Assembly (NCBI GenBank): GCA_002269645.1
Contig: NIVC01000016.1
Span: 496,001 to 560,000, forward strand
Direction of reading: 5' to 3'
Length of the DNA: 64,000 bases
DNA from: Macrostomum lignano
Taxonomy: Eukaryota
The notes beneath the pieces are model-generated. The model was not told where the DNA came from. It ran no database searches and saw only the letters and a program-made list of their open reading frames with translations. A program made the position numbers and the translations under genes. Shown one piece after another: positions 28,044 to 31,410 of this stretch. How positions within the stretch are numbered: position 1 is the stretch's first letter; each line of letters begins with the position of its first letter.

Positions 28044-31000
28044 CTAGAGGATCCGGTATTTCTGCCCGCTGCTGCCGCTCCCGCTGAGCACCTTCTGCTG
28101 GCGGCTTCTCAGTTTAGCCAGAGCCATCGTGAGCAGCAGAACAAGCAACAGTACGATGCAGGCCATCGCGCACACAGCCGCCAACATCACCCAGTTGTAC
28201 AGGGACAGCAGCAGCTCTTTGTCCGACTTGGCATGGCCGGCGCTACCGCAAGGCTGTCGGGTGGTTAATGGTGGCTTAAAAACTTTGGCTTCTGTTAGAT
28301 AAGCTGCTTACAGATTATGGCTGCGATACAGGTAGGTGCAGCCATGCAGTACGTGTCTAACAGGTCGAACCATATTCCAGAGGGTGACACACTGTCTAAC
28401 AGGTGGAACCATATTCCAGAGGGTGACACACACTGTCTAACAGGTGGAACCATATTCCAGAGGGTGACACACACTGTCTAACAGGTGGAACCATATTCCA
28501 GAGGGTGACACACACTGTCTAACAGGTGGAACCATATTCCAGAGGGTGACACACACTGTCTAACAGGTGGAACCATATTCCAGAGGGTGACACACTGTCT
28601 AACAGGTGGAACCATATTCCAGAGGGTGACACACACTGTCTAACAGGTCAAACCATATTCCAGAGGGTGACACACACTGTCTAACAGGTGGAACCATATT
28701 CCAGAGGGTGACACACACTGTCTAACAGGTGGAACCATATTCCAGAGGGTGACACACACTGTCTAACAGGTGGAACCATATTCCAGAGGGTGACACACAC
28801 TGTCTAACAGGTCAAACCATATTCCAGAGGGTGACACACACTGTCTAACAGGTGGAACCATATTCCAGAGGGTGACGCACACTGTCTAACAGGTGAAATT
28901 CCATATTCCAGAGGGTGACACACACTGTCTAACAGGTGAAATTCCATATTCCAGAGGGTGACACACACTGTCTAACAGGTGAAATTCCATATTCCAGAGG
29001 GTGACACACACTGTCTAACAGGTGGAACCATATTCCAGAGGGTGACACACACTGTCTAACAGGTGGAACCATATTCCAGAGGGTGACACACACTGTCTAA
29101 CAGGTGGAACCATATTCCAGAGGGTGACGCACACTGTCTAACAGGTGGAACCATATTCCAGAGGGTGACACACACTGTCCAACAGGTGGAACCATATTCC
29201 AGAGGGTGACACACACTGTCTAACAGGTCAAACCATATTCCAGAGGGTGACACACACTGTCCAACAGGTGGAACCATATTCCAGAGGGTGACGCACACTG
29301 TCTAACAGGTGGAACCATATTCCAGAGGGTGACACACACTGTCTAACAGGTGGAACCATATTCCAGAGGGTGACACACACTGTCTAACAGGTGGAACCAT
29401 ATTCCAGAGGGTGACACACACTGTCTAACAGGTGGAACCATATTCCAGAGGGTGACACACACTGTCTAACAGGTGGAACCATATTCCAGAGGGTGACGCA
29501 CACTGTCTAACAGGTGGAACCATATTCCAGAGGGTGACACACACTGTCTAACAGGTGGAACCATATTCCAGAGGGTGACACACACTGTCTAACAGGTGGA
29601 ACCATATTCCAGAGGGTGACACACACTGTCTAACAGGTGGAACCATATTCCAGAGGGTGACGCACTGTCTACTAAGTTGGAAATAACAGCAAATGGTTTA
29701 ATTAACTGAAGCACTGAACAGCTGAACAACCAATAATAGCTCGTAGCAACTGCAATACCAAACCAATTGCCCCAGTCAGCATCACCTGGTCGTGGATCAC
29801 GGCCGCTTTAAACAGACTGTGCAGTCCGACGAGGCCGATGCAAGCGATGCCGCCTCCCCGGTGATACTGCGTCTCTGCCCGGTTCATATCGCCAATGCAC
29901 GTGTGCGGCTTGGCATCAGTCTGGGCAGTCACGCACCACTTCGAATGGTCCTTTGTAGACTTAAACTGCGTCTGGTTCCCGATGCGAACATCGAGCACTT
30001 TGGTGACATTGTAGCGCCTGTTGCATGTCGAATTCAGCAGCTCTTTGCCGTGCTGCCAGGTTTCTACCTGCGTAAAACACAAAACGCAAAACTACCGATT
30101 ACATGTAAAACAAAAAATTTACTAAAAATTTTGTAAAACTGCACTTCTTCTTTTGTAGAAGTATTGAAGTATAGAAGTATCTAAAAAACACATTTTTTTA
30201 CAAATCAGTACAAAATATCTGATAATTCTCTACGTGCAACCACGGACAACTAAGGAAGAATTAGGACACTATACAGTTGGTTTCTTAGAAATGAACCGGA
30301 AGGAACATATATTTGTAGTATCACTGGTGTATTTACTACTCTAGAGCTGAATGGGGTTTGGCCATAGACTAATTCAGTCGAGAAAAGTCCGCTTTTTCTA
30401 TAATAACATGTACAAATGCGCTAGCGATCCTGCTAATCCGCTGGATTCCCTACCCGCCTTAAGATCATTTCTAAGAAAATCGAGTGCAACTGTCCTTTTA
30501 CTGCAATTTTCGATGCGTGCAACTCAGATCCGGAGTAAAGTGAGGTTTGGCCTTTATTTAATTTTCTATACATGTAAAACGCGAGATTCACGTCATTATA
30601 CAACGGGTCATTTCCAGTGATCCCACTGGATGTGATCCCACAGAAGCAATATACCTGAATGTTCGACTGAAGCTGACCAGCCAACAGGTAAGAATACAGG
30701 TCCTGCTTCAGGTGCGGAGACTTGGCCAGGTGCATCACGGACAGGCCACCGGAGGTCACCAGCTTGACAGTGGAATTCATCAAAGCCTTCGGTGGCTGCT
30801 TCCGTTTCTTCAGATCTGCCCAGCTGGGCCAGGCGGCCTCGGCGGCGGGGCTGACGCTGAGGCTGTAGAGGTCCGGGTGCGAGACGAACAGCTGGCTGCC
30901 GATGATGTTGGCCATCTTTGCGCTGTCCACGGTCAGGCAAAGGAAGCTCTGGCCGTATTTCATCCCAGTGTCCGGGTACTCGTAGCGATGCAGGCTCATG

Positions 31001-31410
31001 TTCGGGAACTTTGGCACGCTGTGGATCAGCCAGAAGCCTTTCTGGCCAGACTTCAAAGCGACGAGCCCTTTCATGTGGCCGAACGCGCTGCTGCCGATGC
31101 TGCTGCTGTTGTTGTCCTCTGGCGGCTCGTCGTTGTACGCGGCCAGAACATCGGCGGCGGCATTGGAGCCGGCCTGCAGGACCTGGCTGACGGTGCTGAA
31201 CACGGGGCCATCCCGGGTGATGTCGCAGCCATCCGGCTGAATCCAGGCGGTTGACGAATTCGAGCTGACGTAGGCGTAGTGTCCGGAGTGCGGCTGCTTC
31301 AGCAGAGCGAACCAGTCCAGAGGAAAGCCATCGGCATCCAAGCACTGGAACTCGGCTGATGCAGCATGAACCAGCCAGGCTGATAGCGATAAAACAAATT
31401 TGTAGTTCAT
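28044..31410 (-). CDS. DNASE2: Deoxyribonuclease II (acid DNase, PLD superfamily) with C-terminal transmembrane anchor; exons 31410-30655, 30067-29786, 28253-28044; 415 aa
   Basis: Signal peptide, CLDADGFPLDWF, both catalytic HxK motifs (GHMKG, DHSKW), WLIHSVPKFP, YGQSFLC and CIGDMNR...RGGG. Phase-0 splicing to exon 3 (PCG...TM...KYRIL*) restores the conserved terminal QPC. Confidence 0.93.
28355..29670. repeat. 41-bp minisatellite (GACACACACTGTCTAACAGGTGGAACCATATTCCAGAGGGT), about 32 copies
   Basis: Fills DNase II intron 2. Confidence 0.93.

What the first reader, a model, noticed from the sequence alone, without database searches (positions are those of the whole stretch)
28044..31410. DNase II with a transmembrane anchor and C-terminal YRIL lysosomal-type sorting motif
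Seen: exon 2 ends ...AVIHDQ|gt and splices in phase 0, across a 1.5-kb intron filled mostly by a 41-bp satellite, to cag|CCT TGC. This gives HDQPC (the conserved terminal Cys) followed by SAGHAKSDKELLLSLYNWVMLAAVCAMACIVLLLVLLLTMALA-KLRSRQQKVLSGSGSSGQKYRIL*: about 24 hydrophobic residues, a basic stop-transfer segment and a terminal YxxPhi. Both catalytic HxK motifs are intact. Established: characterised DNase II enzymes are soluble lysosomal or secreted proteins, while terminal YxxPhi motifs sort LAMPs and lysosomal acid phosphatase via AP adaptors. Inference: a type I membrane nuclease that reaches lysosomes or phagosomes independently of mannose-6-phosphate, or cycles through the cell surface to digest extracellular or engulfed DNA.
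Basis: partly seen in the sequence, partly recalled or inferred. Interest (0 to 1): 0.8.

Follow-up and report, generated by a model that had tools for sequence, protein, structure and literature searches.

The report
Membrane-anchored DNase II in a flatworm
The window holds a real, transcript-annotated Macrostomum lignano acid-DNase (DNase II) gene whose last exon adds a membrane-spanning helix and a short cytosolic tail ending in YRIL; this architecture is rare and undescribed for a normally soluble enzyme, and the claim that the tail is a lysosome-type sorting signal is not established.

Summary
On the minus strand, three exons (31410-30655, 30067-29786, 28253-28044) join in phase 0 through GT..AG introns. 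The second intron is 1532 bp, and 1312 bp of it is a 41-bp satellite. The 415-aa product is identical to GenBank PAA94095.1 of Macrostomum lignano, whose annotation was built only from RNA-seq transcripts.

Exon 3 belongs to this gene. Its first two codons supply the last two positions of the Pfam DNase_II profile, including a Cys that is invariant in 28 homologues. Its GC3 (0.81) matches exons 1-2.

The protein has a signal peptide, both HxK motifs, a confident DNase II fold, a 26-residue hydrophobic helix and a basic 23-residue tail ending in YRIL. This predicts a type I membrane protein.

The architecture is rare but not unique. About 1% of roughly 250 sampled relatives, from protists, also carry a C-terminal TM segment plus tail. 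Nematode CRN-7-like proteins end in GPI-like hydrophobic tails.

The "lysosomal-type" reading of YRIL is weak. The Tyr lies 19 residues from the membrane, not about 7. The motif has a 16% chance of occurring somewhere in such a tail. No orthologue is available to test conservation, and the other TM-bearing DNase II tails lack the motif.

Verdict: a genuine new architectural variant of a known enzyme, of moderate interest.

The parts
30655..31410 (-). Coding exon 1 (residues 1-252): start codon, signal peptide, first half of the DNase II domain
   Evidence: Translation and GT donor. tblastn 100% over residues 1-253. GC3 0.80.
31354..31410 (-). Predicted signal peptide MNYKFVLSLSAWLVHAASA (residues 1-19; A-S-A at positions -3 to -1)
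   Evidence: Read from the sequence. Helix 2-16 in the model. Kyte-Doolittle windows of 1.6 or more at the N-terminus of several sampled homologues. No SignalP run was available.
31069..31077 (-). First catalytic HxK motif (H112-M-K114)
   Evidence: H112 and K114 are invariant in the 28-sequence alignment A1.
30068..30654 (-). Intron 1 (587 bp, GT..AG, phase 0)
   Evidence: GC 0.37.
29786..30067 (-). Coding exon 2 (residues 253-346), ends ...AVIHDQ
   Evidence: GC3 0.72.
29939..29947 (-). Second catalytic HxK motif (H293-S-K295)
   Evidence: D292 and K295 are invariant and H293 and S294 nearly invariant (at least 90%) in A1. All four are invariant in the 6-sequence alignment A2.
28254..29785 (-). 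Intron 2 (1532 bp, GT..AG, phase 0)
28354..29665 (.). 41-bp minisatellite, 32 copies, inside intron 2. Copy number differs between genomic copies of the gene (about 34 in L001, about 8 in L002).
   Evidence: TRF. Pattern search gave 29 matches against 0 expected. Paralogue coordinates.
28044..28253 (-). Coding exon 3 (residues 347-415 plus TAG): the end of the DNase II domain, a linker, the TM helix and the cytosolic tail
   Evidence: GC3 0.81. 99.5-100% identical in two other genomic copies.
28248..28253 (-). P347-C348, the last two positions of the DNase_II profile; this is the conserved terminal Cys
   Evidence: Pfam match 22-348 against profile positions 1-326 of 326. C348 is invariant.
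28116..28193 (-). Predicted transmembrane helix W367-A392 (26 residues)
   Evidence: Kyte-Doolittle 19-residue maximum 3.16. Continuous helix 352-403 with pLDDT 86-97.
28047..28115 (-). Predicted cytosolic tail KLRSRQQKVLSGSGSSGQKYRIL (23 residues; 4 basic and 0 acidic residues in its first 15)
   Evidence: Residues 407-415 have pLDDT below 50, i.e. they are disordered.
28047..28058 (-). C-terminal Y412-R-I-L415 (the YxxPhi pattern)
   Evidence: Function not shown.
27971..27976 (-). ATTAAA, a candidate polyadenylation signal starting at the 68th base after the stop codon
   Evidence: Inference only.

Best explanation
This is a genuine, expressed Macrostomum lignano DNase II gene.

Shown in silico: the product is made with a cleavable signal peptide, so the glycosylated and catalytically intact DNase II domain faces the lumen or the outside. 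The last exon anchors that domain by a single C-terminal transmembrane helix. The result is a type I membrane protein with a 23-residue basic cytosolic tail.

Inferred: the anchored enzyme travels ER, Golgi, then the endosomal/phagosomal system, where low pH allows DNA cleavage. Likely substrates are DNA from ingested diatoms in gut phagocytes and from cell corpses. The disordered C-terminal YRIL is the most plausible adaptor (AP mu-subunit) handle. Because it sits 19 residues from the membrane, it looks more like an endocytic or recycling signal (delivery via the cell surface) than a LAMP-type direct lysosomal signal.

Speculative: the 18-residue luminal linker (GSAGHAKSDKELLLSLYN) could be clipped in acid compartments to release soluble enzyme, as happens with lysosomal acid phosphatase and PLD3.
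For: - Gene model: phase-0 GT..AG junctions.
- The product is identical to PAA94095.1 / UniRef A0A1I8G2N6. The GenBank annotation of that assembly was derived only from StringTie/TACO/de novo RNA-seq transcripts with TransDecoder ORFs (PMC5730564).
- Exon 3 supplies the invariant terminal Cys and the last two Pfam profile positions.
- GC3 is 0.81, matching exons 1-2. The other two 'AG|Pro-Cys' acceptor candidates downstream have non-coding-like GC3 of 0.43 and 0.58.
- Enzyme identity: Pfam DNase_II 2.4e-84; both HxK motifs conserved; AF2 model pLDDT 88.5; top structural hits are Burkholderia DNase II 5i3e/5unb, E 1e-20; seven N-x-S/T sequons lie in the luminal part.
- Topology: Kyte-Doolittle 3.16; helix 352-403; +4/0 charge after the helix against +2/-2 before it.
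- The tail end is disordered and therefore accessible.
- No second Macrostomum DNase II appeared among the best hits of three searches. This may therefore be the animal's main DNase II, which favours an endolysosomal role.
- Independent precedents for the architecture: complete transcript ORFs P0165 (Hemimastix kukwesjijk) and P0175 (a EukProt protist), and the metagenomic P0257, all with DNase II plus TM plus tail.
Against: - I saw no RNA-seq reads, so transcript support is indirect (through the annotation method).
- The three genomic copies are 99-100% identical, introns included. They therefore say nothing about selection on the tail.
- No orthologue from another Macrostomum species is in the databases, so neither the TM segment nor YRIL can be tested for conservation.
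- YRIL spacing (19 residues, Lys at position -1) departs from LAMP-type lysosomal signals (plus my own knowledge of the Bonifacino and Traub rules).
- The chance of a YxxPhi somewhere in such a tail is 0.16.
- The other TM-bearing DNase II tails carry no YxxPhi.
- No dedicated TM or signal-peptide predictor could be run.
- Localisation, acid DNase activity and clipping are untested.
Confidence: 0.6

Rival explanations
1. The protein is membrane-anchored as described, but YRIL is a chance tetrapeptide. The enzyme would then be a resident cell-surface or gut-lumen-facing ectonuclease, or be retained elsewhere in the secretory pathway, digesting extracellular DNA in an acidic gut. This would be a functional analogue of GPI-anchored DNaseX.
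For: - The chance of a YxxPhi in the tail is 0.16.
- There is no conservation evidence.
- The other TM-bearing DNase II tails lack the motif.
- Membrane-bound DNases acting at the cell surface or phagocytic cup are known (PMC13649258).
Against: - DNase II is an acid nuclease, so it needs an acidic compartment.
- The motif sits exactly at the C-terminus (probability 0.008) in a disordered segment, as in many genuine signals.
- This appears to be the only DNase II seen for the species, so some of it should reach lysosomes.
Confidence: 0.22
2. The TM exon belongs to a minor or aberrant isoform, or is an annotation artefact. The main product would be an ordinary soluble DNase II that ends elsewhere, through read-through of the exon 2 donor or another terminal exon.
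For: - No reads were inspected here.
- Read-through of the exon 2 donor gives an ORF ending after 27 more residues, VMLTGAIGLVLQLLRAIIGCSAVQCFS*.
- Two further AG|CCN-TGY sites exist downstream, at 27490 and 27282.
Against: - The read-through product lacks the invariant terminal Cys.
- The alternative acceptors have non-coding GC3 and lie in AT-rich DNA.
- Exon 3 completes the Pfam profile exactly and has GC3 0.81.
- The same 415-aa model is given for three genomic copies and by two sets of database entries: GenBank PAA94095.1/PAA85566.1 and UniRef A0A1I8GCS4/A0A1I8G2N6. The GenBank set comes from transcript assemblies.
Confidence: 0.07
3. The hydrophobic segment is a GPI-attachment signal that is removed, giving a lipid-anchored enzyme with no cytosolic tail.
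For: Several DNase II relatives do end in a terminal hydrophobic stretch right after the conserved Cys, which is GPI-signal-like. These are the nematode CRN-7-like P0063, P0095, P0021, P0045, P0059, P0092 and P0098, and also P0006.
Against: Here 23 hydrophilic, strongly basic residues follow the 26-residue helix. GPI signals end with the hydrophobic stretch (established knowledge). No GPI predictor was run.
Confidence: 0.03

Closest known systems
DNase II family (Pfam PF03265; human DNase II alpha/beta, Drosophila DNaseII, C. elegans NUC-1/CRN-6/CRN-7, plancitoxin; structure 5i3e/5unb)
   Same: - Full-length domain match and both HxK motifs.
- Conserved cysteines, including the terminal Cys.
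- Signal peptide and N-glycosylation sequons.
- The predicted fold.

   Different: Characterised members are soluble lysosomal or secreted proteins, and most sampled homologues end within about 0-30 residues of the terminal Cys. This one continues into an 18-residue linker, a 26-residue TM helix and a 23-residue cytosolic tail. Identity to any non-Macrostomum relative is at most about 39%.
Uncharacterised TM-bearing DNase II relatives: P0165 (Hemimastix kukwesjijk, EukProt EP00696), P0175 (EukProt protist transcript), P0257 (JGI metagenome, 523 aa)
   Same: DNase II domain followed by one C-terminal hydrophobic helix and a hydrophilic tail of roughly 20-100 residues that begins with basic residues.
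   Different: - Only 28-32% identical in the domain (A2).
- Linkers and tails are unrelated in sequence and length, and none has a YxxPhi.
- P0175 lacks the terminal Cys.
- The anchors were most likely acquired independently (inference).
Lysosomal acid phosphatase (ACP2) and LAMP1/2: type I proteins sorted by cytosolic YxxPhi
   Same: A luminal hydrolase or glycoprotein, a single C-terminal TM segment, a short basic tail and a YxxPhi. In the LAMPs the motif is at the extreme C-terminus. ACP2 is later clipped to a soluble enzyme (own knowledge; ACP2 is listed as lysosomal in PMC12684396).
   Different: There is no sequence relationship. In LAMP1 the Tyr is about 7 residues from the membrane and this spacing is critical (PMC2199866). 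Here it is 19 residues away, and it is preceded by Lys rather than Gly.
PLD3/PLD4 lysosomal 5' exonucleases
   Same: Membrane-anchored nucleases delivered to lysosomes without depending on being soluble cargo, and PLD3 is clipped to a soluble luminal domain (PMC12684396; PMC10783504 abstract). They use the same HxK-type (PLD-superfamily) catalytic chemistry (own knowledge).
   Different: They are type II proteins with an N-terminal anchor, sorted by ubiquitination into intraluminal vesicles. They are exonucleases on single-stranded substrates. They belong to a different family (the top fold hits after DNase II are only weak Tdp1-type PLD folds).
DNaseX / DNASE1L1 (GPI-anchored DNase I family)
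   Same: A membrane-tethered DNase acting on engulfed or extracellular DNA at the phagocytic cup (PMC13649258).
   Different: It has a DNase I fold, a neutral pH optimum, a lipid anchor and no cytosolic tail.

Membership tests
DNase II (PF03265) | Full-length match to the family profile above the curated cut-off | tested here: met
   283.7 bits against a cut-off of 23. Residues 22-348 match profile positions 1-326 of 326.
DNase II (PF03265) | Two catalytic HxK motifs | tested here: met
   H112/K114 and K295 are invariant and H293 is nearly invariant in alignment A1.
DNase II (PF03265) | DNase II fold | tested here: met
   AF2 model pLDDT 88.5. Foldseek top hits 5i3e/5unb: E 1.2e-20, TM-score 0.63 normalised by the query and 0.75 by the target. 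phmmer against PDB gave 6e-26.
DNase II (PF03265) | Conserved cysteines, including the C-terminal Cys | tested here: met
   C23, C158, C309, C328 and C348 are invariant and C267 is nearly invariant. The pairing of cysteines was not examined.
DNase II (PF03265) | Acid, cation-independent endonuclease activity | not testable with these tools
   Needs an enzyme assay.
Type I single-pass membrane protein | N-terminal cleavable signal peptide | tested here: inconclusive
   MNYKFVLSLSAWLVHAASA has the classical n/h/c layout with an AxA, but no dedicated predictor was available.
Type I single-pass membrane protein | One hydrophobic helix of at least 19 residues after the luminal domain, with positive charge on the cytosolic side | tested here: met
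   W367-A392. Kyte-Doolittle maximum 3.16. Helix 352-403. +4/0 charge after the helix against +2/-2 before it.
Type I single-pass membrane protein | Membrane integration shown experimentally | not testable with these tools
   Needs carbonate extraction or protease protection.
LAMP/LAP-type lysosomal YxxPhi sorting signal | A Y-x-x-(bulky hydrophobic) motif in the cytosolic tail | tested here: met
   Y412-R-I-L415 at the C-terminus. The chance is 0.008 at a fixed position and 0.16 anywhere in the tail.
LAMP/LAP-type lysosomal YxxPhi sorting signal | Tyr placed about 6-9 residues from the membrane (spacing critical for lysosomal delivery) | tested here: not met
   19 residues lie between A392 and Y412. 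Adding 5 residues to LAMP1 abolished lysosomal targeting (PMC2199866).
LAMP/LAP-type lysosomal YxxPhi sorting signal | Gly immediately before the Tyr (typical of lysosomal signals; rule recalled from Bonifacino and Traub 2003) | tested here: not met
   The residue at position -1 is Lys411.
LAMP/LAP-type lysosomal YxxPhi sorting signal | Motif conserved in orthologues | tested here: inconclusive
   Only near-identical M. lignano copies exist. No orthologue above about 39% identity was found in three searches.
LAMP/LAP-type lysosomal YxxPhi sorting signal | Binding to AP mu subunits and Tyr-dependent localisation | not testable with these tools
   Needs binding and localisation experiments.
GPI-anchored protein | Hydrophobic signal at the extreme C-terminus with no hydrophilic tail after it | tested here: not met
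   23 hydrophilic, basic residues follow the helix.
PLD3/PLD4-type membrane nucleases | Type II orientation (N-terminal signal anchor) and a PLD3/4 domain | tested here: not met
   The anchor is C-terminal and the only significant Pfam family is DNase_II.

The most novel reading that the evidence does not exclude
The only DNase II type of M. lignano is made as a type I membrane protein and is delivered to phagosomes and lysosomes through its cytosolic tail (AP adaptors, via the cell surface) rather than as soluble mannose-6-phosphate cargo. The same solution, tethering an acid DNase to the membrane, arose independently in a flatworm and in several protist lineages. Nematode CRN-7-type enzymes would then represent a third, GPI-like way of doing it. 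That would define an unrecognised membrane-bound branch of DNase II biology, parallel to PLD3/4 and lysosomal acid phosphatase.
Probability: 0.3. Interest if true: 0.55.

Novelty: new variant of a known kind. Interest (0 to 1): 0.4.

Why it matters
DNase II is the textbook soluble lysosomal DNase. How it reaches lysosomes, and how early it meets engulfed DNA, matters for clearing cell corpses and for innate immune sensing of DNA.

A natural membrane-tethered DNase II would show that the enzyme works while anchored or after clipping. It would also give a route to lysosomes that does not depend on soluble-cargo receptors. The sporadic protist examples suggest the solution was reached repeatedly.

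M. lignano is transgenic-tractable (PMC5730564), so tagging and a Y412A test are feasible.

The stakes are moderate. This is a change in the architecture and trafficking of a known enzyme, not a new activity, and the sequence itself is already public, though unremarked.

Tried and rejected
1. Selection on the tail using the three genomic copies (window, L001, L002). They are 99-100% identical, introns included. There are four substitutions in L002 exon 2 (three synonymous, one S336R), one A354T substitution in L001 exon 3, and a 1-bp gap in L002 exon 1. This is uninformative.

2. Orthologues from other Macrostomum species or close flatworms. Three protein searches and name look-ups found nothing closer than about 39% identity. 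Cestode and schistosome DNase II proteins have no TM segment.

3. Direct cDNA evidence. The exact protein occurs only on NCBI genome contigs, and no Logan or transcript contig carries it. The junction could therefore not be seen in reads.

4. Searching the papers for the gene id Mlig011103 gave 0 hits.

5. Literature on TM-, GPI- or membrane-anchored DNase II. I found nothing relevant, only PLD3/4, DNaseX and Trichinella DNase II without a TM segment.

6. GPI-signal reading: rejected because of the 23-residue basic tail.

7. 'The exon belongs to another gene': rejected. The only neighbour downstream is on the opposite strand (a PCI/CSN7-like gene).

8. Alternative terminal exons beginning with Pro-Cys (27490 and 27282): rejected as unlikely because of non-coding GC3.

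9. The satellite as something functional: rejected. The window carries dozens of comparable minisatellites, and copy number varies freely between gene copies.

10. P0099 (Oppiella, partial) and P0241 (a Logan contig) were flagged by the TM scan. I discounted them as likely fusion or read-through artefacts, judging from their sequences.
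Full report
**What is in the sequence**

- Exon 1: 31410-30655 (756 nt).
- Intron 1: 30654-30068 (gt...ag).
- Exon 2: 30067-29786 (282 nt), ending ...AVIHDQ|gtgatg.
- Intron 2: 29785-28254 (1532 bp), ending ...cccgacag.
- Exon 3: 28253-28044 (69 codons plus TAG).
- Both junctions are in phase 0.

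Tandem Repeats Finder gives a 41-bp unit, 32.0 copies, 97% matches, at 28354-29665. That is 86% of intron 2. A consensus search found 29 matches against 0 expected.

The 415-aa product ends ...HDQ|PCGSAGHAKSDKELLLSLYN WVMLAAVCAMACIVLLLVLLLTMALA KLRSRQQKVLSGSGSSGQKYRIL*. Otherwise the description is accurate.

**Where it comes from, and whether the junction is real**

The product is letter-for-letter GenBank PAA94095.1 (BOX15_Mlig011103g1) and UniRef A0A1I8G2N6 of the flatworm Macrostomum lignano. Two further near-identical genes (g2, g3) and a second UniRef entry fall in the same 90% cluster.

The GenBank annotation of that assembly (Mlig_3_7) was not predicted ab initio. It is a filtered set of RNA-seq transcript assemblies (StringTie, TACO and a de novo transcriptome) with TransDecoder ORFs (PMC5730564). 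So the 29786^28253 junction has indirect transcript support.

Independent internal evidence agrees.
- The Pfam DNase_II match covers residues 22-348 against profile positions 1-326 of 326. The last two profile positions are P347-C348, the first two codons of exon 3.
- C348 is invariant in an alignment of 28 diverse homologues.
- Read-through of the exon 2 donor would instead add VMLTGAIGLVLQLLRAIIGCSAVQCFS* and lose that Cys.
- GC3 is 0.80, 0.72 and 0.81 for exons 1, 2 and 3, while the unique intron and flanking DNA has 0.35-0.47 GC.
- Two other 'AG|Pro-Cys' sites further downstream have GC3 of 0.43 and 0.58 and lie in AT-rich DNA.
- The next gene downstream is a convergent plus-strand PCI/CSN7-like gene. 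The exon therefore cannot belong to a neighbour.

I could not inspect reads. The exact protein is on record only on genome contigs.

**The protein**

- Pfam DNase_II, E 2.4e-84.
- H112-x-K114 and H293-x-K295 lie in invariant or nearly invariant columns.
- An AlphaFold2 model built on the 28-sequence alignment has mean pLDDT 88.5 and pTM 0.82.
- Its best structural matches are the Burkholderia thailandensis DNase II crystal structures 5i3e/5unb, E 1e-20. These are also the only sequence match in the PDB.
- There are seven N-x-S/T sequons in the luminal part.
- The N-terminus MNYKFVLSLSAWLVHAASA|EF looks like a classical signal peptide. This is by inspection only, as no predictor was available.
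- After C348 come an 18-residue linker, then W367-A392 with a Kyte-Doolittle 19-residue maximum of 3.16. This segment is modelled as part of one long helix 352-403, with block-mean pLDDT 86-97 over residues 361-400.
- The tail KLRSRQQKVLSGSGSSGQKYRIL follows. Its first 15 residues have 4 basic and 0 acidic residues, against 2 and 2 on the other side of the helix. Its last residues are disordered, with pLDDT below 50.

Signal peptide, a single helix and positive charge inside together predict a type I orientation: nuclease domain luminal or extracellular, tail cytosolic. A GPI signal is excluded by the long basic tail.

**How unusual is it?**

An exhaustive HMMER scan of 1.84 billion representatives found 2260 DNase II relatives. 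Across this and two word-indexed searches, I could read about 253 non-Macrostomum proteins with a recognisable end of the domain.
- Three credible cases carry a C-terminal TM helix followed by a hydrophilic tail. P0165 is a complete transcript ORF from Hemimastix kukwesjijk. P0175 is a complete EukProt protist ORF. P0257 is a 523-aa metagenomic eukaryote protein with a Ser/Thr/Pro-rich stalk.
- Their linkers and tails are unrelated to the flatworm's and to each other, which suggests independent gains (inference).
- Two further scan hits (P0099, P0241) look like artefacts.
- Eight proteins end in a bare hydrophobic stretch right after the conserved Cys, which is GPI-signal-like. These are mainly nematode CRN-7-like enzymes, plus P0006.
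- Cestode and schistosome DNase II proteins have no TM segment.
- No other Macrostomum DNase II appeared among the best hits.

The literature I could search calls DNase II a soluble nuclease (PMC13649258). It offers no description of a transmembrane DNase II. The architecture is therefore rare, at about 1% of those sampled, and apparently undescribed. It is not unique.

**The sorting motif**

YRIL fits YxxPhi and sits at the very C-terminus in a disordered segment, as in the LAMPs. The 'lysosomal-type' label is nonetheless not earned.
- Tyr412 is 19 residues from the end of the helix and is preceded by Lys.
- In LAMP1 the Tyr is about 7 residues from the membrane. Deleting one residue or adding five almost abolished lysosomal targeting and trapped the protein in plasma-membrane/early-endosome recycling, with only modest effects on internalisation (PMC2199866).
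- By the mammalian rules (my recollection of Bonifacino and Traub 2003: lysosomal signals lie 6-9 residues from the membrane, often as G-Y), YRIL looks more like an endocytic, TGN38-like signal.
- With generic amino-acid frequencies, a YxxPhi occurs at a given position with p = 0.0084, and somewhere in a 23-residue tail with p = 0.16.
- None of the three protist TM-DNase II tails has one.
- The three M. lignano copies are 99-100% identical even in their introns, so they give no evidence of constraint.

The motif is therefore a reasonable hypothesis, not a finding.

**Most likely mechanism**

- Shown in silico: an intact DNase II domain tethered by a C-terminal TM helix in type I orientation.
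- Inferred: transport through the secretory pathway to endosomes, phagosomes and lysosomes, where acid pH permits DNA cleavage. This probably occurs in the phagocytic gut cells of this diatom-eating worm and during corpse clearance. The tail, most plausibly YRIL through AP adaptors, would drive internalisation and sorting.
- Speculative: proteolytic release at the 18-residue linker, as for lysosomal acid phosphatase and PLD3 (PMC12684396).

Rivals:
- The motif is accidental and the enzyme is a surface or gut-lumen ectonuclease (0.22).
- The exon belongs to a minor or artefactual isoform (0.07).
- The segment is a GPI signal (0.03).

**Comparison and verdict**

The protein is a member of the DNase II family: every sequence and structure criterion tested was met. 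It works like the membrane-tethered lysosomal hydrolases (ACP2, PLD3/4) and the membrane DNase DNaseX, but it is not a member of those families.

It fails two of the features that define LAMP-type lysosomal signals, namely the spacing from the membrane and Gly at position -1.

The sequence is already public, labelled 'hypothetical protein' and 'Deoxyribonuclease II', but the anchor appears not to have been remarked on. I rate it a new variant of a known kind, with interest 0.4. It is real, testable in a transgenic-tractable animal, and mildly surprising to a specialist. It is an architectural and trafficking variation rather than a new activity, and its key functional claim is unverified.

Noticed in passing
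window 31939-32011 (+): A tRNA-Lys (anticodon CTT) gene sits about 530 bp upstream of the DNase II start codon, on the opposite strand.
   Followed up: no
L001 7746-9139; L002 7398-7723; window 28354-29665: The intron-2 satellite has about 34, about 8 and 32 copies in the three otherwise 99-100% identical genomic copies of the gene. The array therefore expands and contracts quickly and is not constrained.
   Followed up: partly
L002 5666-6420 (exon 1 of copy g2): This copy has a 1-bp gap in exon 1 relative to the window. It is annotated only from Met113 as a 303-aa protein (PAA85587.1). It is either a young pseudogene or an assembly error.
   Followed up: partly
window 23067-25045 (+): A convergent PCI-domain gene with a faint, sub-threshold match to the CSN7a helix I model (E 0.0057, 16.9 bits against a cut-off of 26). 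A 20-bp minisatellite (about 56 copies, 23547-24658) lies between its ORF pieces. L002 holds a minus-strand gene with a PCI-domain product (258 aa) downstream of the DNase II copy.
   Followed up: partly
whole window, e.g. 39523-41501, 59906-61729, 57448-58850, 36967-38021: The window is packed with mini- and microsatellite arrays: 55 TRF rows at score 200 or more. Examples are (ATAG)n at about 495 copies and a 10-bp unit at 182 copies. The intron satellite is one of many.
   Followed up: no
proteins P0063, P0095, P0021, P0045, P0059, P0092, P0098, P0006: Nematode CRN-7-like DNase II proteins, and one metagenomic relative, end in a 15-20-residue hydrophobic stretch directly after the conserved terminal Cys with nothing following. 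This resembles a GPI-attachment signal and may be a second, unremarked way of tethering DNase II.
   Followed up: partly
window 29705-29785 (-): If the exon 2 donor were not used, the frame stays open for 27 mostly hydrophobic residues (VMLTGAIGLVLQLLRAIIGCSAVQCFS*). This retained-intron product would lack the invariant Cys.
   Followed up: partly
window 31411-31430 (-): The sequence ...actacag|cggtgtgaacaatATG, just upstream of the start codon, contains an AG that could serve as a spliced-leader trans-splice acceptor. Trans-splicing is common in M. lignano (PMC5730564). This is speculation from the sequence only.
   Followed up: no
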